A stretch of 64,000 nt of DNA from the sequence record NC_061441.1. One strand, given 5' to 3'. The notes beneath the pieces are model-generated. The model saw nothing but the letters and a program-made list of their open reading frames with translations. It made no database searches and had not been told where the DNA came from. Shown in pieces: positions 12,610 to 22,165 of the stretch. The translations under genes and the position numbers were made by a program. Within the stretch, counting starts at the first letter, position 1, and each line of letters begins with the position of its first letter.

Positions 12610-13139
12610 CAGATCAAGTAATCACATTCGAAGACCAGCAAAGCTGGGAAGACTTCGGTGAAGCTGTTCACAATGAGTTTTTGCTGAACACGATGACAGG
12701 TAGCAGTAGCGCCAGTCAGATCCCGAGTGTTGGTCCTAACGAAGGCGTGAAACATGCGCTGACCTATGCCAACATTCTTCGTGGTGAGCAGTCGCCTATC
12801 GTTGTGCTCGATTTGCTGATCGAAGAAGTTGCTTTGGCTGAGGGCGAGACTAGTCCTTTCGATGCTGATGGTCTTGAGCAGGCCGTGCGTAAAGTAGTGG
12901 CGTTGTATCAAGCGCGAGCGCGTGACCTCGACTGTCATATCACTGGTCAGTACCTGACAGATGATAACAAGGTCATCGGCGCATTGCTGCGTGTGTATCG
13001 CAATCAGGACTTCCCGTGTACTGGGCATCCTGAAATGCTGCACGGTAAACCAATCGGTATGTTCCACTGCGATAAGTGTCATGAGATGCAAGTCGCTGGT
13101 ACGTTCCATCTTCCCAAAGAGGAAACTCAAAATGGTTAA
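12606..13139 (+). CDS. Hypothetical protein with C-terminal Cys/His cluster
   Basis: 177 aa; CHITGQY...VIGALLRVYRNQDFP; C..H..H...HCxxCH tail. Confidence 0.75.
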   Translation: MTDQVITFEDQQSWEDFGEAVHNEFLLNTMTGSSSASQIPSVGPNEGVKHALTYANILRGEQSPIVVLDLLIEEVALAEGETSPFDADGLEQAVRKVVALYQARARDLDCHITGQYLTDDNKVIGALLRVYRNQDFPCTGHPEMLHGKPIGMFHCDKCHEMQVAGTFHLPKEETQNG

Positions 13140-13599
13140 AGGTGGGTTGTGGCGTGTCTTCCCTGACTACGACTCGGAAGCATTGCTGATGAAGCTCGGC
13201 GCCGCTATCGGTATCGAGCACGACGAAGACGATGTGCCTGGAGAATTGCACGTTACTCTGGCTTACGACGAATCGAACCCTGACGTCAAGGCCGAGCAGA
13301 ACGATGCTGGTGAGTTCTTCGCTACCGTCAAATGTGCTAAGTTGTTTGGCGAAGGTCAAGATAGGATTCTGGTACTCGTACTTGAATCACCTGACCTGTG
13401 TGCAGAACATGATCGCATCCACGCATGTGGTGCCGCCCAGTTCGCATTCAAGCCGTACCGCCCTCACGTCACGCTGTTGAAGTCTGCCAAAGACAGCCAA
13501 GCTGAACATCTCAATCAGATCATTCAGCACCCAGGCCGTCCTCCAATCACTCTGCGCTTCATTGAAGAAGATCGCAAGGTGCTGGAGAAGCGTAACTAA
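13132..13599 (+). CDS. 2H phosphoesterase, Acb1 (T4 gp57B)-like anti-CBASS nuclease
   Basis: Two HxT motifs (LHVTLAY, PHVTLL); LVLVLESPDL..EH...GA....Y.PHVTL parallels the recalled T4 57B sequence; GAGGA RBS. Confidence 0.8.
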   Translation: MVKGGLWRVFPDYDSEALLMKLGAAIGIEHDEDDVPGELHVTLAYDESNPDVKAEQNDAGEFFATVKCAKLFGEGQDRILVLVLESPDLCAEHDRIHACGAAQFAFKPYRPHVTLLKSAKDSQAEHLNQIIQHPGRPPITLRFIEEDRKVLEKRN

Positions 13600-16439: not shown

Positions 16440-18971
16440 ATGGCGAAAACGAACAACAAGGCTGAGAAGAAGGCCGAGAAGAAAGCTAAAGTCAAAGCTC
16501 TGAAAAGCGGAGAAAAGGCAGTAGCTTCTGATGATATCGGCGGCGTTGAAATTCAAGGCTTCGACCTCGCAAGTTTGATGGACGATGTGCTTGACGGCAT
16601 CGAAAAGAAAACGAAAGTAAGTTCGCAGGATGCAGCGCGACACGCACCGCGTATCTCAACAGGCTGTCTGGCGCTTGACATGTATTTGTCTGGCGGTATC
16701 GTACCTGGCGGTTGGTACACATTCAGCGGCGGTGAGCAGTCATGTAAGTCAACAATGACCATGAGCATTATGGCGAGCCTGATTCGTCTGAAATACTCTG
16801 GCATTAGCGTAGTGTTCGACTACGAAGGTTCAACCGATGCCGAGTACGTTGCTGGTCAGTTGAAAACGTTCGGCGTTAAGGTCGACCCGAAAACTATCTT
16901 CGGTGTGCGTGACGATAAAGACGGTAGCTGGATCGTTAAGCCTAAGATCCGTTACTACGCACCAGACAACGGTGAGCGCTTCTTCGATTATATGTCGATG
17001 CTGCGTCGTCGTCTGCCTGACAAAATCGTTGAGAAAGACGGCACCGCGTATTACATCTTTGAGAACAACAAAGAGAACGCGAAGAAGCTGGCAGGCAAGT
17101 ACGATAAGAAATGGTTCAGCCGTAACAACCAGTTCAAAGTACCTGCGCCAGACGGCCACATGCAGGCGATGGTTATCGTTGACTCCTATCCTGCGATGAT
17201 GCCAGATCAGGTCGATGACGATGACGGCTCGAAAGCAATGGCGCTGCAAGCGCGTATGTTCTCTGACGGCATCAAACGTTTCCGTGGCGGTATGCGTCGT
17301 AAGATGATGACTATCGTTGGCGTTAACCAGTTGCGTCAGAAGCCAGCAGTAATGTTCGGCAGCCCGGAGTATGAGCCTGGTGGTGATGCGTTGAAGTTCT
17401 ATTGCTTCGACCGTGACACTCTGATTCGTACTGACCACGGCGTATTGACTGCACCGCAGATTAAAGCGCTGATGGACGAAGGCAAAGAAGTTGCCGTTGA
17501 GTCGTTCGATGGTTATCAGAAAATCAACGGCGCATGGCTTGTCAATGACGCTCCGTTCCCGTTCGAACTGAATGCTGGTGGTCATGTGTATGTTGGCTCG
17601 GCCGAACATCGCCAGTTCACGTTCATGCACGATCTGACTGCCGAAGGTACTCCAGTTCTGCGTCCTGAATGGAACACGCTGAATCAACTGGCGCAGTACC
17701 CAGAGCAGAAAGGTCAGTACGCTGGTCTGCGTGTACCACCAGTTAAGGAACTGAAAGAGAATGTTCCTGACGCCTTCGATGAAGCCTCACAACTGGTAAG
17801 CAATCTGCTTGGAAACTGCGACCCTGTTAGCAAGCAACTGCCGCTGGTGACTCACGGTGATACCACCTACGCTGCAAACTGTCTGTTCATCGACACTGTG
17901 GGCGAAGACACCGACACTGGTTCGTTCTCGTTCTGGGTAGAGAAGTTACTGGCCATCGGCGTATTTGCTTACGCTGACGAAAGCGGTATCTGGATTCCAG
18001 GTCTGAACAAACACGAACTGGAAGCGGCTGTAGCGCAGGACGAACTCGGTGCGTTTGCTGGTATCAGTTTTGAAGCGACCTGTCGTCAACGTCAGACTCA
18101 AATGCTGACCGTGATTGTCGATCACTTCCCTGAGCTGGTACGTTACGTTCTCGACTATCAGTTGCAGACGGGCGAAGACAAAATCTACCTGGCGCCTGAG
18201 AACGACTTCGCACAAGCGCTTGACCTGATTCTGCACAAAGAGATCGCTGGTTACGACGACTACTATGACCTGCTGATGTTCCAGCTGGCGTATGTCGATG
18301 ACTGGTACAACTTCGATTCCTCAATTCTGCCTGTGCCGTTTACGCTTCGTGCGCTCAACGAACAGCGTGAGTTCTGGGACGTGAACGTTGAAGAAACGTC
18401 GGTAGTAATCACCAACGGCTTCGTCAGTCACAACAGCGACGTGCGTGTGCGACTGGCTTCTCGTGCGGTACCAGAAGGCTGGCCGAAACTGAAAGATGCT
18501 CCTGGCATCGTCGGTGAGAAGTCGGTAACAGTTGAAGGAGGTACTGACCGCTATCGCTTCATCGCTGCTAAGACCATCAAGAACAAGATGGGCGGCATCC
18601 CTAACCAGCAGACGTGGTTACGTTTGTGGGAAGCTGACGGTAACGGTGAAGCTCGCGGTTTCGACCCAGTGTTCGATACGTGGCACTACCTGAAAACTCT
18701 GGGTCTGGTCAATGGTAGCCGTAAGTCGTTCAAGCTGAAAGCTCCGTGCCCGCTCGCATCTGATGTTAAGATGGATTGGGATGACTTCCGTACACTCATC
18801 AACGGCAGCAAAGAACAAGTTGTTGGCGTGTGTAAGAAACTGAAAGTCAAACCTGCGGGCCTGCGTCTGTGGTGCTTCAAGTTCGTTCAGTCCACTAAGG
18901 GCAACGAAATGTTGAAGAACGCAATCAGTAAGTCTGCCAAGAAGTCTGATGACGACGACGGCGACGAGTAA
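16440..18971 (+). CDS. recA: RecA/UvsX recombinase containing an intein
   Basis: ISTGCLALD..LSGG, Walker A GGEQSCKST, VIVDS, VNQLRQ, PGGDALKFY|SDVR, KTIKNK; 843 aa, 499 aa after splicing. Confidence 0.92.
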   Translation: MAKTNNKAEKKAEKKAKVKALKSGEKAVASDDIGGVEIQGFDLASLMDDVLDGIEKKTKVSSQDAARHAPRISTGCLALDMYLSGGIVPGGWYTFSGGEQSCKSTMTMSIMASLIRLKYSGISVVFDYEGSTDAEYVAGQLKTFGVKVDPKTIFGVRDDKDGSWIVKPKIRYYAPDNGERFFDYMSMLRRRLPDKIVEKDGTAYYIFENNKENAKKLAGKYDKKWFSRNNQFKVPAPDGHMQAMVIVDSYPAMMPDQVDDDDGSKAMALQARMFSDGIKRFRGGMRRKMMTIVGVNQLRQKPAVMFGSPEYEPGGDALKFYCFDRDTLIRTDHGVLTAPQIKALMDEGKEVAVESFDGYQKINGAWLVNDAPFPFELNAGGHVYVGSAEHRQFTFMHDLTAEGTPVLRPEWNTLNQLAQYPEQKGQYAGLRVPPVKELKENVPDAFDEASQLVSNLLGNCDPVSKQLPLVTHGDTTYAANCLFIDTVGEDTDTGSFSFWVEKLLAIGVFAYADESGIWIPGLNKHELEAAVAQDELGAFAGISFEATCRQRQTQMLTVIVDHFPELVRYVLDYQLQTGEDKIYLAPENDFAQALDLILHKEIAGYDDYYDLLMFQLAYVDDWYNFDSSILPVPFTLRALNEQREFWDVNVEETSVVITNGFVSHNSDVRVRLASRAVPEGWPKLKDAPGIVGEKSVTVEGGTDRYRFIAAKTIKNKMGGIPNQQTWLRLWEADGNGEARGFDPVFDTWHYLKTLGLVNGSRKSFKLKAPCPLASDVKMDWDDFRTLINGSKEQVVGVCKKLKVKPAGLRLWCFKFVQSTKGNEMLKNAISKSAKKSDDDDGDE
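17403..18434 (+). mobile_element. Intein (344 aa) in recA
   Basis: Starts with Cys (CFDRDTLI) after ALKFY; block B SAEH; block F FWDVNV; ends SHN followed by Ser; extein motif KFY-SDVR is restored on removal. Confidence 0.92.
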
Positions 18972-19013: not shown

Positions 19014-19442
19014 ATGCGCACTCAAATCTATACGGCTGATATCGTCAATCTGGAAACAGTGGTCGTTGACGAAGAAGGTCAAGAGACACGCAGTCCGACA
19101 ATCGTTCCTAATCTCGAAGGCGAACGTGATCTGACTGTTAGCACTCTCGGTACTATCATGGCTACCGTGACCGCTGAACCAAATCCTGACGCTCGCATGA
19201 TCGTTCTGGTGTCACGCGCTCTGTTCCCTGCTTTCGCAGACCCTGAAGGTGACCTGTTCGATATCTTCGATCCGATCGAACGTGTTGCTGATGTTGTTGC
19301 TGGAAACGTCGGCAGCATTCTCGGTATGCAGGTAGTAATCAACGATAAGTCCGACGACAACGTTCTGGCTATCGCTGATGTTCTTGATACCGAAGCTGGC
19401 GTTACTATTCGCACCTTCGGCGCTGCGCTCGTTCGCGCGTAA
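19014..19442 (+). CDS. Hypothetical acidic protein
   Basis: GGAG RBS, 142 aa. Confidence 0.75.
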   Translation: MRTQIYTADIVNLETVVVDEEGQETRSPTIVPNLEGERDLTVSTLGTIMATVTAEPNPDARMIVLVSRALFPAFADPEGDLFDIFDPIERVADVVAGNVGSILGMQVVINDKSDDNVLAIADVLDTEAGVTIRTFGAALVRA

Positions 19443-19448
19443 GTAAAC

Positions 19449-19476
19449 TTGTGCGGGATAATGCTTTCCCGCACAA
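19449..19476. other. Perfect 10-bp inverted repeat (hairpin without U-tract)
   Basis: TTGTGCGGGA-N8-TCCCGCACAA. Confidence 0.7.
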
Positions 19477-19483
19477 TCCCTCT

Positions 19484-19536
19484 CTCGATAGGCAATACGC
19501 CACGAGAAAACAAACCACTCGATAGGCAATACGCCA
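19484..19536 (+). repeat. 19-bp perfect direct repeat CTCGATAGGCAATACGCCA x2
   Basis: Copies at 19484-19502 and 19518-19536; the second abuts the GGAG RBS of 19547. Confidence 0.9.
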
Positions 19537-19546
19537 GGAGTAATGT

Positions 19547-20248
19547 ATGAAAAAGATTCAACACGTAACACTTCCGACCGATGCACTCAACGGACTCATT
19601 CATGGCTATTACCACCATAGCAAAACCACTGATGAATTTTGCAGATCGTTGATCTATATTGACGTTACCGACCGCAGCGCCTCAGATGCGCTGTATGCTA
19701 TATTGAAACGTGAGCCGACAAAAGGCATTGTCCCTATGGGATATGATTGCTTACGAGAAGCACGTGGGCACACTGCTCCAGCACAACTCGCAATCGTATT
19801 GTCCAACAACCTGTTGCATATAGATAATACGAAGATGGCTGGAGGCGTACAGGCCATCTTTAACGCTCTGGCCAGAACCACGCACACCAACGATACTCAA
19901 ATAACTGTGTACGGCGAGCCTGGAGTAAGTAAGATTCTCAACATAATGCGCGACATTCAATATAAAGAATATATTAACGCGCCTGAATCCGACATTGTGC
20001 TTGGCGACTTTAACCTTGAGTCGAACATGACTATAGACCATTTCGTTCACATGGCTATCGATCCTAAGTTCGAAGAAGCTATCCGCAATTCTCCTGCCAC
20101 AGAATTTAAACTGGGCAGCAGTTTCATGTTCATGCACCCAGATGAATTGACTAAGGTTGTACGCATGGTCCGCCGTTGCAGTAAAATCTGCATCATGCAC
20201 CCTGACATTCATCGCTATTACTTTGAGAACGTAATCTGTAAATACTAA
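19547..20248 (+). CDS. Hypothetical protein, paralogue of 21398..22165
   Basis: 233 aa; collinear motifs with 21398..22165. Confidence 0.75.
   Translation: MKKIQHVTLPTDALNGLIHGYYHHSKTTDEFCRSLIYIDVTDRSASDALYAILKREPTKGIVPMGYDCLREARGHTAPAQLAIVLSNNLLHIDNTKMAGGVQAIFNALARTTHTNDTQITVYGEPGVSKILNIMRDIQYKEYINAPESDIVLGDFNLESNMTIDHFVHMAIDPKFEEAIRNSPATEFKLGSSFMFMHPDELTKVVRMVRRCSKICIMHPDIHRYYFENVICKY
20233..20244 (+). promoter_or_regulatory. AATCTGTAAATA motif at the end of 19547..20248
   Basis: Exact copy upstream of the AcrVA2-like gene. Confidence 0.5.
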
Positions 20249-20296
20249 TCACCAAACCGAACACATTGCTGTGTGTAGTCTAGCCCGACTTGGGCA

Positions 20297-20327
20297 GGGG
20301 AGAGCCGGATGGCCTCCCCATTTTTTT
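20297..20327 (+). terminator. Intrinsic terminator in the leader of the AcrVA2-like gene
   Basis: GGGGAG-A-GCC-GGAT-GGC-CTCCCC-A-T7. Confidence 0.8.
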
Positions 20328-20350
20328 ATCTACACACTGCGGAGAACAGT

Positions 20351-21352
20351 ATGTCTAAAACGAAGTCAACTCCACAGACCTTCCTCGACCTATTCTTAAA
20401 GGATGTTAAGCTCTTTCTGCCAAGGTTCGACAAAGGACTGGACGCGTACTTATTGAAGTGCAAAGGCAAGCCGGGTCCTTATGGCGTATCGCTTCATCAA
20501 TACATGAAGTGGCTAAATCCTGTAGCGCGACTTCCTGCCAACGCAAGCGAAGTGTCTATCATCACATCAGGCTACCTGCATTACTTTTGGCAACTCGCTA
20601 AACCTAACTTTGTGTTGGAGCCTGTGCTTGTCAATCATTTGGTTGAGTCTGTGTTGCCTGACGAACTCCCGGCTGAGATTCTTCAACGTCTGCCTTACTG
20701 GAGTCAGTGGATTACGTTGCCTCTGCATCTGGTAAGCAAAGACAATATTCTGGATCTGGACTTCGATGGTGCTTTCGTTGGGTATACATCAATCGACAAC
20801 AGACCTGCGCTTGTCCTTGCGGCACCGTTTGTTTCCAACAATCAAAACATGCGCTCGAACGACTTCACACCGTTCGTTACATCGCATGTATTTCTTGATG
20901 CTCCTGTACGTCCAGAGTTTTTGGTAAGGAACAGCCACATACTCAACGTTGATGCAGACGCAATGAGCAAAGAAGCATACACCGTATTGATAATGAACAT
21001 TCACCACTTCCTGGTGAAAGTGATCAACTGTGTCATGTATATCTGCTCGCAACAGGAAGCACTGTATCAGGAAGGTCATTCTCAACCTAAGCCGCAGCGT
21101 CTAGGTAAGAGCTATCGCATCACGCCACCGAAAGATGATCGCATGATCACGGTGGGCGCCGAGATGACCAAGATACTCAAAGACTTCGAAGCAGAAGTCG
21201 AATCGTGTGCTCGCGCTTTCAATGGGCGTAAGCCGCATATACGAAAAGCGCACTACCACCACTTCTGGACAGGACCGAAAGTAGGAGTTCGTACCCTTGT
21301 CTGTAAGTGGTTGCCACCAAGTATTGTTCGCGGCACCATCGTAGAGCAATAA
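20351..21352 (+). CDS. AcrVA2/FinQ-family protein
   Basis: LPDELPAEILQRLPYW and C-terminal RKPHIRKAHYHHFWTGP...KWLPP match recalled AcrVA2 (LPDDTPTSIFLNLPDW; RPHIRRGHWHGYWQG...RWQP); GGAG RBS. Confidence 0.75.
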   Translation: MSKTKSTPQTFLDLFLKDVKLFLPRFDKGLDAYLLKCKGKPGPYGVSLHQYMKWLNPVARLPANASEVSIITSGYLHYFWQLAKPNFVLEPVLVNHLVESVLPDELPAEILQRLPYWSQWITLPLHLVSKDNILDLDFDGAFVGYTSIDNRPALVLAAPFVSNNQNMRSNDFTPFVTSHVFLDAPVRPEFLVRNSHILNVDADAMSKEAYTVLIMNIHHFLVKVINCVMYICSQQEALYQEGHSQPKPQRLGKSYRITPPKDDRMITVGAEMTKILKDFEAEVESCARAFNGRKPHIRKAHYHHFWTGPKVGVRTLVCKWLPPSIVRGTIVEQ

Positions 21353-21397: not shown

Positions 21398-22165
21398 ATG
21401 AAATCTCGTGTACAACATGCGTATATTCCTGATATGGAATCGTTTGACCCTTACGTCCGCTCTCTGTGCCATATGGCGCGAGCACTGGACACACCGAACT
21501 CTAACTACGGTAAGTTGAAACGTGTCGTGATCATCGGTACGTCGAAGCGTGTGGTTGAGGCATACGTTAAGCAGTTACTCAACACAAACACGCTGCCGCA
21601 CACTCTCATTTGTTTTGGCGTAGACGAACCGCCTATCAGTCACCGTGATTATACCTACGCTGGCGCCCACGTTGTGCTGATGCACGATCTGACCTACGTT
21701 GATAGCGGCACAATGGACAAGGTCGCCACGCGTGTGATTGAAATCATCGACAGCCTCAAACAGAAGCCTGGCGAAACAGAACTTAAAAATTCCGAGCTGT
21801 CTATGGTGTATTCGAATCCTCTGCTGTGGCGATCCATTATCGACTACGGTGCTTCCGTTTCTCTGCGCATGAATGGTAGCAATATTGAATACCGTAGCGG
21901 TCTGGTGTCGTCTATTGGCTTCGATGCGTTGTTACGTTGTGAAAGCAATGCAGACTACCATGAACTTCGCGCTGATAAGATTACGATCGGTCTGGAGTTC
22001 TTCTGCGTACACACGGACTACCTGCTGTCAAAAGTACACAACCTGCTGTGGTCGCTCGCTTGTGACGACTGCAAATTCAAAAAGACGCACCGTATTATCT
22101 TCCATGAAGACTTCCGACGCTTATTCTTCGAAGAATATCTCTTGAGGGACTTCCAGGGCTTTTAA
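21398..22165 (+). CDS. Hypothetical protein, paralogue of 19547..20248
   Basis: 255 aa, GGAGG RBS. Confidence 0.75.
   Translation: MKSRVQHAYIPDMESFDPYVRSLCHMARALDTPNSNYGKLKRVVIIGTSKRVVEAYVKQLLNTNTLPHTLICFGVDEPPISHRDYTYAGAHVVLMHDLTYVDSGTMDKVATRVIEIIDSLKQKPGETELKNSELSMVYSNPLLWRSIIDYGASVSLRMNGSNIEYRSGLVSSIGFDALLRCESNADYHELRADKITIGLEFFCVHTDYLLSKVHNLLWSLACDDCKFKKTHRIIFHEDFRRLFFEEYLLRDFQGF

What the first reader, a model, noticed from the sequence alone, without database searches (positions are those of the whole stretch)
20351..21352. AcrVA2/FinQ-family protein in an enterobacterial-type jumbo phage: target unknown
Seen: RKPHIRKAHYHHFWTGP...KWLPP and LPDELPAEILQRLPYW match AcrVA2 as I recall it. 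Established: AcrVA2 recognises nascent Cas12a and triggers decay of its mRNA, and the homologue FinQ silences F-plasmid transfer genes. Inference: Cas12a is unlikely in this phage's probable hosts, so the protein may silence another defence or host gene by the same mechanism.
Basis: partly seen in the sequence, partly recalled or inferred. Interest (0 to 1): 0.8.

Follow-up and report, generated by a model that had tools for sequence, protein, structure and literature searches.

The report
AcrVA2-like gene in Erwinia jumbo phage
A gene labelled "hypothetical" in an Erwinia amylovora jumbo phage is a clear member of the AcrVA2/FinQ family, whose founder shuts off one chosen protein by destroying its mRNA during translation; the host has no Cas12a, so its target is unknown, as the published work on this family already expects for most members.

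Summary
Window 20351-21352 (+) is gene gp250 of Erwinia phage pEa_SNUABM_16, a 267-kb Alexandravirus. It is an intact 333-aa ORF annotated "hypothetical protein".

It belongs to the AcrVA2/FinQ family (Pfam PF26125, "AcrVA2-like"):
- The single sequence matches the AcrVA2 structure 7ci1 at E=6e-5. A family profile matches it at E=1.4e-39 over the whole chain.
- A confident AlphaFold model (pLDDT 91.7) matches only AcrVA2 in the PDB (TM about 0.6; next hit TM 0.11).
- FinQ returns as a named plasmid hit.
- The residues needed for AcrVA2 activity (W79, H286, R288, H291) are W80, H296, R298, H301 here and invariant in my family alignments.

The host has type I-E CRISPR, with no Cas12a reported, so a non-Cas12a target is a sound inference. 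It is also the published hypothesis (Marino et al.), which already notes orthologues on megaphages.

What I add: the gene sits in a syntenic, hypervariable slot. Its first ~300 codons are exchanged as a cassette between closely related phages. A conserved upstream hairpin and the C-terminal motif region stay with the backbone. dN/dS is low, so this is mosaicism, not gene-wide positive selection.

Verdict: a new member of a known kind, of moderate interest.

The parts
20351..21352 (+). gp250 CDS (333 aa plus stop): AcrVA2/FinQ-family protein (Pfam PF26125 'AcrVA2-like')
   Evidence: ORF and annotation; AcrVA2 7ci1, E 6.1e-5 single sequence, 1.4e-39 profile; fold; FinQ; phrog_6160; PF26125 on relatives that are 25-96% identical
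20351..20599 (+). N-terminal helical domain, residues 1-83; residues 1-30 vary among relatives; W80 (20588-20590) aligns with AcrVA2 W79
   Evidence: helices 7-18, 20-36, 48-55, 65-80; variability; W80 invariant
20654..20701 (+).
20801..21001 (+). Hypervariable segment, residues ~151-217 (beta-sheet of the middle domain and start of the long helix): lowest identity in every comparison and low occupancy family-wide; candidate specificity determinant (inference)
   Evidence: identity by bins; family-wide conservation; nucleotide identity dips to 46% vs AD1 and 85-90% vs SNU22; dS 0.42 vs SNU22 here against 0.04-0.10 in most neighbouring genes
21233..21328 (+). C-terminal conserved motif region, residues 295-326; H296 (21236-21238), R298 (21242-21244) and H301 (21251-21253) align with AcrVA2 H286, R288, H291; W306, G308, W320 also invariant or nearly so
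   Evidence: alignment to 7ci1, chain index one higher than the paper's numbering; invariance; these residues are required for AcrVA2 mRNA downregulation
20255..20327 (+). Conserved non-coding element upstream of gp250: a motif unique in the window (exact 15-mer at 20267-20281), a small hairpin at 20283-20295, and a strong hairpin at 20297-20319 followed by T7 at 20321-20327 (terminator-like); it forms the 5' boundary of the exchanged cassette
   Evidence: dG -25.3 kcal/mol, z -3.75; conserved in 8 phages; Yoloswag has a different GC hairpin plus T-run at the same place; motif unique in the window; 90-94% identity to SNU40 and SNU17
20341..20344 (+). Shine-Dalgarno-like GGAG, 6 nt before the ATG at 20351
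   Evidence: purine-rich equivalents in orthologues

Best explanation
gp250 is a phage-encoded member of the AcrVA2/FinQ family. By analogy with AcrVA2, it most likely works in three steps. Its conserved C-terminal part, carrying H296, R298 and H301, associates with translating ribosomes. Its variable N-terminal and middle parts recognise a short sequence in the nascent chain of one particular protein. That recognition triggers decay of the mRNA being translated by a cellular RNase, so the target protein is never made. Because Erwinia and Dickeya hosts are not known to carry Cas12a, the target must be something else, most plausibly a host anti-phage defence protein. Shown here: family membership, fold, conservation of the functional residues, single copy, syntenic position, and modular exchange of the first ~300 codons between close relatives. 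Inferred: the mechanism, the division of labour between the modules, and the class of target.
For: Membership: AcrVA2 7ci1 at E=6.1e-5 and E=1.4e-39 with a 32-sequence profile covering chain 13-318. The AF2 model has pLDDT 91.7 and pTM 0.89. Its only significant PDB matches are the three AcrVA2 chains (E 1.7e-12, TM 0.59/0.62, prob 1.00). FinQ is a named tblastn hit (E 5e-4). Relatives carry PF26125 'AcrVA2-like'. Functional residues: W80, H296, R298 and H301 are invariant in 77 sequences, and they align with AcrVA2 W79, H286, R288, H291. Modularity: across 1,775 representative clusters the best-matching stretch is usually residues ~220-326. Against AD1, dS is 1.6-2.4 for codons 1-245 but 0.146 for codons 246-333. 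Against same-genus phages SNU40 and SNU17 (UvsX 90% to SNU40), no DNA homology is found from 20328 to 21249 or 21307, and it returns from there on. This fits the reported split between a C-terminal ribosome-associating part and N-terminal target recognition (summary of Marino et al. 2026 in PMC13728456). Non-Cas12a target: the host has type I-E plus a remnant I-F array, and the family is mostly found without Cas12a. Counter-defence context: gp243 in the same gene block passes Pfam's threshold for anti-CBASS Acb1.
Against: No functional data exist for this protein or for any jumbo-phage orthologue. The mechanism rests on one characterised member that is about 15-20% identical. TM of about 0.6 with rmsd 7-8 A shows differences in domain arrangement. 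AcrVA2 D89 is E90 here (conservative). The local Pfam library returned no hit for the window protein itself, so PF26125 membership is indirect. dN/dS is low everywhere (0.08-0.18), so there is no gene-wide signature of positive selection, which an arms-race gene might be expected to show. The gene is present at the same position in all related phages examined, which would also fit a housekeeping or self-regulatory role. E. amylovora is genetically uniform, so deep allele diversity among phages isolated on it is not obviously explained by a single host target. The very low dS of the last 88 codons could reflect a nucleotide-level constraint, for example signals for gp251, rather than recombination.
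Confidence: 0.6

Rival explanations
1. Same family and same mechanism, but the target is not a host defence protein. Instead it is a protein of a competing mobile element, such as a co-infecting phage, a resident prophage or a plasmid, as with FinQ, which lowers F-plasmid transfer-gene mRNA.
For: FinQ, a family member on IncI plasmids, acts against another plasmid and is a named hit of this protein. Deep allele diversity among phages isolated on one uniform host species is easier to explain if targets are variable accessory elements.
Against: A strictly lytic 267-kb phage gains little obvious benefit from blocking conjugation. Identity to FinQ is only about 22%, and FinQ's N-terminal part differs. 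No competitor target is identified.
Confidence: 0.15
2. A host-takeover or self-regulatory factor: gp250 shuts off a host housekeeping protein, or one of the phage's own proteins, for temporal control rather than for counter-defence.
For: The gene holds a fixed syntenic position next to the sigma factor, SSB and UvsX in three genera. It is single-copy and under purifying selection. A terminator-like hairpin directly upstream suggests controlled, low-level or timed expression.
Against: A conserved housekeeping or phage target would not predict alleles that are 27-34% identical in phages whose UvsX is 77-94% identical. The neighbouring hypervariable gene gp249 does not co-vary with gp250: AD1 and Alexandra have similar gp250 alleles (73-74% to the window) but different gp249 alleles (53% and 32%).
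Confidence: 0.12
3. A family member that has lost or changed the mRNA-decay activity and acts simply by binding a partner protein (stoichiometric inhibitor or adaptor).
For: AcrVA2 also binds mature Cas12a and a second Cas12a peptide. No enzyme-like fold is detectable.
Against: Binding alone was not inhibitory for AcrVA2. The residues needed specifically for mRNA downregulation rather than for binding are invariant here and across the family, which argues that the activity is retained.
Confidence: 0.08

Closest known systems
AcrVA2 (Moraxella bovoculi prophage; PDB 7CI1/7CI2)
   Same: Length (333 vs ~322 aa), three-part architecture and fold (Foldseek prob 1.00, TM ~0.6), full-length profile match (E 1.4e-39), conserved W, H-x-R-x-x-H and following W/G positions, and carriage on a mobile element.
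   Different: About 14-17% structural-alignment identity. Middle-domain segment 151-217 and the first ~30 residues are unrelated. Encoded by a lytic jumbo phage of a host with type I-E CRISPR and no reported Cas12a. No acrVA1-like neighbour recognised. D89 is E90.
FinQ (fertility inhibition protein of IncI/IncF-like plasmids)
   Same: Named tblastn hit over residues 79-323 (E 5e-4, 22% identity). It shares the invariant columns in alignment A1. It is a family member acting on a non-Cas12a target at the mRNA level.
   Different: Shorter (259 aa as annotated in L007) and lacking most of the N-terminal helical domain. Plasmid-borne next to transfer genes. Acts on F transfer genes, which is irrelevant to a lytic phage.
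AcrVA2-like genes of other phages (huge-phage metagenomes; Shewanella phage vB_SbaS_Y11 ORF43; Klebsiella, Serratia, Salmonella jumbo phages; Leptospira, Lactobacillus, Pasteurella phages)
   Same: Same family, in phages whose hosts mostly lack Cas12a; functions untested.
   Different: Different genomic contexts. The Erwinia/Dickeya group is the only one examined here, and it carries the gene in a fixed syntenic slot with exchanged allele cassettes.
Tubulin autoregulation in mammalian cells (analogy for the mechanism only)
   Same: A nascent N-terminal peptide is recognised on the ribosome and triggers decay of the mRNA being translated. The AcrVA2 authors cite this analogy.
   Different: No homology; eukaryotic factors; shown here only by citation.

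Membership tests
AcrVA2/FinQ family (Pfam PF26125 'AcrVA2-like') | Significant full-length sequence similarity to AcrVA2 | tested here: met
   phmmer vs PDB: 7ci1_A E=6.1e-5, query 66-326 / chain 66-316. Profile of 32 relatives: E=1.4e-39, profile 15-328 / chain 13-318.
AcrVA2/FinQ family (Pfam PF26125 'AcrVA2-like') | AcrVA2 fold (helical N-terminal domain, beta-rich middle domain, small C-terminal beta domain) | tested here: met
   AF2 pLDDT 91.7. Foldseek PDB: 7ci2_A, 7ci1_A and 7ci1_B are the only hits with E<=0.001, TM 0.53-0.62; next hit TM 0.11.
AcrVA2/FinQ family (Pfam PF26125 'AcrVA2-like') | C-terminal H-x-R-x-x-H (AcrVA2 H286, R288, H291), required for mRNA downregulation | tested here: met
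   H296, R298 and H301 align with them. They are invariant in 32- and 77-sequence alignments and in 20 of 20 jumbo-phage orthologues.
AcrVA2/FinQ family (Pfam PF26125 'AcrVA2-like') | Conserved N-terminal W79 and D89 (moderate loss of function when mutated in AcrVA2) | tested here: met
   W80 is invariant. The D89 position is E90 here; among 20 orthologues it is E in 13, D in 5, other in 2, a conservative change.
AcrVA2/FinQ family (Pfam PF26125 'AcrVA2-like') | Direct hit to the curated Pfam model PF26125 | tested here: inconclusive
   The local Pfam-A copy returns no family for the window protein or for relatives. Relatives that are 25-96% identical carry a precomputed PF26125 hit, and one search gives its name as 'AcrVA2-like'. 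The model appears to be missing from the local library.
AcrVA2/FinQ family (Pfam PF26125 'AcrVA2-like') | Homology to FinQ | tested here: met
   tblastn vs plasmids: genes annotated finQ, E 5e-4, 22% identity over residues 79-323. FinQ from L007 aligns with the invariant columns.
AcrVA2/FinQ family (Pfam PF26125 'AcrVA2-like') | Translation-dependent, polypeptide-specific downregulation of a target mRNA | not testable with these tools
   Needs expression data. Known only for AcrVA2.
Type V-A anti-CRISPR (functional class 'AcrVA') | Inhibits Cas12a, with Cas12a present in the host range | tested here: not met
   From the literature only: E. amylovora has a type I-E cas cluster and a remnant I-F array, and PMC9004355 has no mention of Cas12. 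The family is typically found without Cas12a. Activity against Cas12a itself was not tested. The gene should not be named an anti-CRISPR.
Fertility inhibition factor (functional class of FinQ) | Encoded on a conjugative plasmid and inhibits transfer of a co-resident plasmid | tested here: not met
   The gene is on a 267-kb phage genome within the replication/recombination gene block. Inhibition of conjugation was not tested.

The most novel reading that the evidence does not exclude
The Erwinia/Dickeya jumbo phages carry a natural series of interchangeable 'specificity cassettes' for a nascent-chain-directed mRNA silencer. Recombination between a conserved upstream hairpin element and the conserved C-terminal ribosome-associating motif would swap the first ~300 codons. 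Closely related phages would then silence different host defence proteins, possibly including type I-E Cas components, with the same effector module. This would be the first defined non-Cas12a targets for the family and a natural example of how its specificity is reprogrammed.
Probability: 0.25. Interest if true: 0.7.

Novelty: new member of a known kind. Interest (0 to 1): 0.42.

Why it matters
AcrVA2 is so far the only bacterial example of a protein that recognises a nascent polypeptide and causes decay of its mRNA. The family is very large: 1,775 clusters at 50% identity, and about 1,800 orthologues in the preprint. Only one target (Cas12a) is defined, and one more (F transfer genes) is suspected. 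This gene belongs to a cultured phage with a well-studied host. It comes with a ready-made set of natural alleles (27-100% identical) on nearly identical phage backbones. That makes it a convenient place to learn, from descriptive data, what a non-Cas12a member targets and which part of the protein sets specificity. On the practical side, it corrects an uninformative annotation in about 50 phage genomes. It also shows that the name "anti-CRISPR" should not be transferred automatically to these genes.

Tried and rejected
- **HMM libraries on the window protein.** Pfam-A, NCBIfam and PADLOC gave no hits. PHROGs gave only phrog_6160, of unknown function. The Pfam miss seems to be a library-version problem, because relatives carry PF26125.
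- **Neighbours as clues.** gp248, gp249 and gp251-gp255 have no PHROG or Pfam hits.
- **gp251 as a possible partner or RNase.** I found 27 homologues, all in the same phage group. The profile found nothing in the PDB. The AF2 model is good (pLDDT 88.7), but Foldseek gave only weak, generic alpha/beta matches with TM <= 0.34. No function assigned.
- **Paralogues in the window.** None. tblastn finds one place per phage record.
- **Positive selection.** Rejected at the gene and region level; dN/dS is 0.08-0.18. Site-level tests were not run.
- **Upstream conserved element as a known RNA or a repeated genome signal.** No Rfam match. The motif is unique in the window. Covariation is too sparse to prove structure: 2 of 16 pairs show compensatory change. 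The consensus promoter/terminator scan did not list the hairpin, probably because it has a bulge, but folding shows it clearly.
- **An enzyme-like fold that could explain RNA decay.** None. All non-AcrVA2 matches have TM <= 0.15.
- **The published Nature paper (Marino et al. 2026).** It is not held, so I rely on the preprint and a one-paragraph summary.
- **Cas12a absence.** I could not search host genomes for Cas12a directly, because no query sequence may be typed. Absence rests on the literature.

Full report
**1. What is there**

The window is part of Erwinia phage pEa_SNUABM_16 (MZ443782 / NC_061441), a 266,838-bp phage of the genus Alexandravirus whose host is Erwinia amylovora. Window coordinate equals record coordinate minus 186,000. 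The finding's coordinates, 20351-21352 (+), are exactly gene MPK64_gp250, annotated "hypothetical protein".

The open frame reaches back to an ATG at 20309, but I accept the annotated start at 20351 (333 aa) for three reasons:
- That upstream ATG lies inside a strong hairpin.
- GGAG sits 6 nt before the ATG at 20351.
- Orthologues begin at the equivalent ATG.

**2. Family membership**

- **Sequence.** The window's own protein finds the AcrVA2 crystal structure 7ci1 at E=6.1e-5 over residues 66-326. A profile of 32 diverse relatives (alignment A1), including FinQ and a Klebsiella jumbo-phage protein, finds it at E=1.4e-39 over chain residues 13-318, with nothing else significant.
- **Fold.** An AlphaFold2 model built on 77 sequences is confident (pLDDT 91.7, pTM 0.89). 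In the PDB it matches only the three AcrVA2 chains (E 1.7e-12 to 2.7e-11, TM 0.53-0.62, probability 1.00). The next hit has E 0.09 and TM 0.11. The fold is therefore specific to this family and resembles no known enzyme.
- **FinQ.** tblastn against plasmids returns genes annotated finQ (E 5e-4, 22% identity, residues 79-323).
- **Pfam.** Relatives that are 25-96% identical carry a precomputed PF26125 hit, which names "AcrVA2-like". The local Pfam library does not return that model for any of them, so I count the direct Pfam test as inconclusive. PHROGs places the protein in phrog_6160, of unknown function.

**3. Functional residues**

Marino et al. (bioRxiv 10.1101/2022.11.29.518452) report the following for AcrVA2:
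- H286A, R288A and H291A abolish cas12a mRNA downregulation while keeping binding.
- W79A and D89A cause a moderate loss of function.

In the HMMER alignments the PDB chain index is one higher than the paper's numbering. The corresponding residues here are H296, R298, H301, W80 and E90. H296, R298, H301 and W80 are invariant in the 77-sequence alignment and in 20 of 20 jumbo-phage orthologues. Position 90 is E or D in 18 of 20.

**4. Size and distribution of the family**

An exhaustive search of 1.84 billion representative proteins finds 1,775 clusters at E<=1e-3 and 249 at E<=1e-10. Most best-matching stretches cover residues ~220-326, so the C-terminal third is the family's common core.

In the phage collection, 79 records carry a match:
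- 52 are Erwinia phages.
- The rest are Klebsiella, Serratia, Salmonella, Dickeya and Escherichia jumbo phages and a few small phages of Leptospira, Lactobacillus and Pasteurella.
- All are unannotated, apart from one misleading "putative mycothiosynthase".

Each record has a single copy, and the window has no paralogue.

**5. Genomic context**

The gene lies in a co-directional block: sigma factor (gp245), SSB (gp246), UvsX-like recombinase (gp247), gp248, gp249, gp250, gp251, gp252. This order is kept in Alexandravirus, Sasquatchvirus (Y3), Yoloswagvirus and unclassified relatives, and in two metagenomic contigs. The immediate neighbours have no family assignment. About 6.7 kb upstream, gp243, annotated "RNA ligase", passes Pfam's threshold for the anti-CBASS protein Acb1 (E 1.2e-11, 45 bits vs cutoff 27). 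The block therefore contains at least one other probable counter-defence gene.

**6. A mosaic, hypervariable slot**

This is the new descriptive result.

- **Identity compared with neighbours.** Against pEa_SNUABM_40 (same genus), the sigma factor, SSB, UvsX, gp252 and gp256 are 88-95% identical, but gp250 is 33%. AD1 and SNU40 share 94% UvsX identity but only 34% at this gene.
- **DNA-level boundaries.**
  - Homology between the window and SNU40 or SNU17 is present in the upstream intergenic element (20233-20327, 90-94%).
  - It is absent across 20328-21249 (SNU40) or 20328-21307 (SNU17).
  - It resumes from there on at 75-95%.
  - The exchanged unit is thus about the first 300 codons. It is bounded 5' by a conserved non-coding element and 3' by the region encoding the conserved histidine/arginine motif and the residues after it.
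- **Substitution rates.**
  - Against AD1, synonymous divergence is 1.6-2.4 for codons 1-245 but 0.146 for codons 246-333, compared with 0.6-0.9 in SSB, UvsX and gp251.
  - dN/dS is 0.08-0.18 throughout.
  - High dS together with low dN/dS indicates old, recombining alleles under purifying selection, not rapid adaptive change across the gene.
- **Hot spot.** The strongest variability is at codons ~150-217 (window ~20800-21000). Nucleotide identity there falls to 46% vs AD1. It falls to 85-90% even vs SNU22, which is 94-100% identical across most of the locus. The same segment has the lowest conservation and occupancy family-wide.
- **Caveat.** The very low dS of the last 88 codons could also reflect a nucleotide-level constraint, such as signals for gp251.

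**7. Upstream element**

Window 20255-20327 holds three features:
- a motif that is unique in the 64-kb window;
- a small hairpin;
- a strong hairpin at 20297-20319 followed by seven T (dG -25.3 kcal/mol, z -3.75).

The element is conserved in eight phages, and Yoloswag has a different GC-rich hairpin plus T-run at the same place. It matches no Rfam family. It looks like an intrinsic terminator ending about 24 nt before the gp250 start codon. I infer that gp250 is expressed by read-through or from a phage-specific promoter further upstream. Its role is otherwise unexplained.

**8. How it most likely works**

The preprint, a 2026 review and a summary of the published version (Marino et al. 2026, Nature 654:771, as summarised in PMC13728456) report the following for AcrVA2:
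- It binds the nascent N-terminus of Cas12a.
- It associates with ribosomes and polysomes through its C-terminal part.
- It causes a cellular enzyme to degrade the not-yet-translated 3' part of the mRNA.

The conservation pattern here fits that division of labour: an invariant C-terminal motif, with exchangeable N-terminal and middle parts. I therefore propose that gp250 is a ribosome-associated, nascent-chain-specific mRNA silencer. Family, fold, residues and modularity are shown. The mechanism and the module roles are inferred.

[quoted passage not shown] The target is therefore very unlikely to be Cas12a. A host defence protein is my first choice, given the Acb1-like gene in the same block and the allele diversity. 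A competing mobile element (as for FinQ), a host housekeeping protein or a phage protein remain possible.

**9. Comparison with what is known, and novelty**

The preprint says orthologues occur on "plasmids and megaphages", "typically in the absence of Cas12a", and may act on other targets. The huge-phage survey noted AcrVA2-like proteins in 2020. A Shewanella phage with such a gene and a type I-E host has also been described.

The gene is thus a new, unannotated member of a known kind. It should be called "AcrVA2/FinQ-family protein", not "anti-CRISPR". What is new here is the fixed syntenic slot with cassette-like exchange of the presumed specificity region. That gives a natural allele series for working out targets.

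**10. What led nowhere, and one slip**

- gp251, always just downstream, gave a good model but no informative structural match.
- No enzyme-like similarity explains the RNA decay.
- The Nature paper is not held.
- In notebook entry 5, I wrote a 22-nt motif with one degenerate position, which is in effect a short consensus.

**Scores**

| Item | Value |
|---|---|
| Interest | 0.42 |
| Novelty | new member of a known kind |
| Confidence in family membership | about 0.98 |
| Confidence in the full mechanistic statement | 0.6 |

Noticed in passing
window 13132-13599 (+), gp243: Annotated 'RNA ligase', but it passes Pfam's curated threshold for the anti-CBASS protein Acb1 (PF23474, E 1.2e-11, 45 bits vs cutoff 27). 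The weaker 2'-5' RNA ligase hit is just below its threshold. The orthologue on metagenomic contig L012 has the same Acb1 hit. Probably a cyclic-nucleotide phosphodiesterase used for counter-defence.
   Followed up: partly
window 16440-18971 (+), gp247: The UvsX-like recombinase is 843 aa against a PHROG profile of 506, and the Pfam RecA domain matches in two stretches. The extra length is conserved in AD1, Y3, Yoloswag and SNU46 (830-843 aa), so it is an old insertion or extension rather than a recent intein.
   Followed up: no
L011:981-4556 (pEa_SNUABM_17), relative to window 17360/17361: The UvsX orthologue of SNUABM_17 is 1,191 aa. DNA homology to the window is interrupted by about 1,050 bp at one point inside the gene, which suggests an intein or homing-endonuclease-type insertion in that phage only.
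   Followed up: no
window 19014-20248 (+), gp248 and gp249: These two ORFs, just upstream of gp250, are also hypervariable. gp249 is 53% identical in AD1, 32% in Alexandra and absent in SNU40, while flanking genes are about 90%. They match no family. The gp248-gp251 stretch forms a variable islet between conserved UvsX and gp252.
   Followed up: partly
window 20255-20327 (+): A locus-specific conserved non-coding element with two hairpins and a T7 run lies directly before gp250. It is 90-94% identical in phages whose gp250 coding sequence is unrelated at the DNA level. It could be a terminator, a 5' leader or a recombination anchor; this is unresolved.
   Followed up: partly
Erwinia phage vB_EamM_RisingSun, NC_042018.1:128380-129135 (hit H65): A family member (28% identical to gp250; Foldseek TM 0.67 to my model) is annotated 'putative mycothiosynthase'. 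This looks like a misannotation.
   Followed up: no
window 21398-22165 (+), gp251: A conserved 255-aa ORF always lies 45 nt downstream of gp250 in this phage group, except in Yoloswag. Its model is a confident alpha/beta fold (pLDDT 88.7) with no informative structural or sequence relatives.
   Followed up: yes
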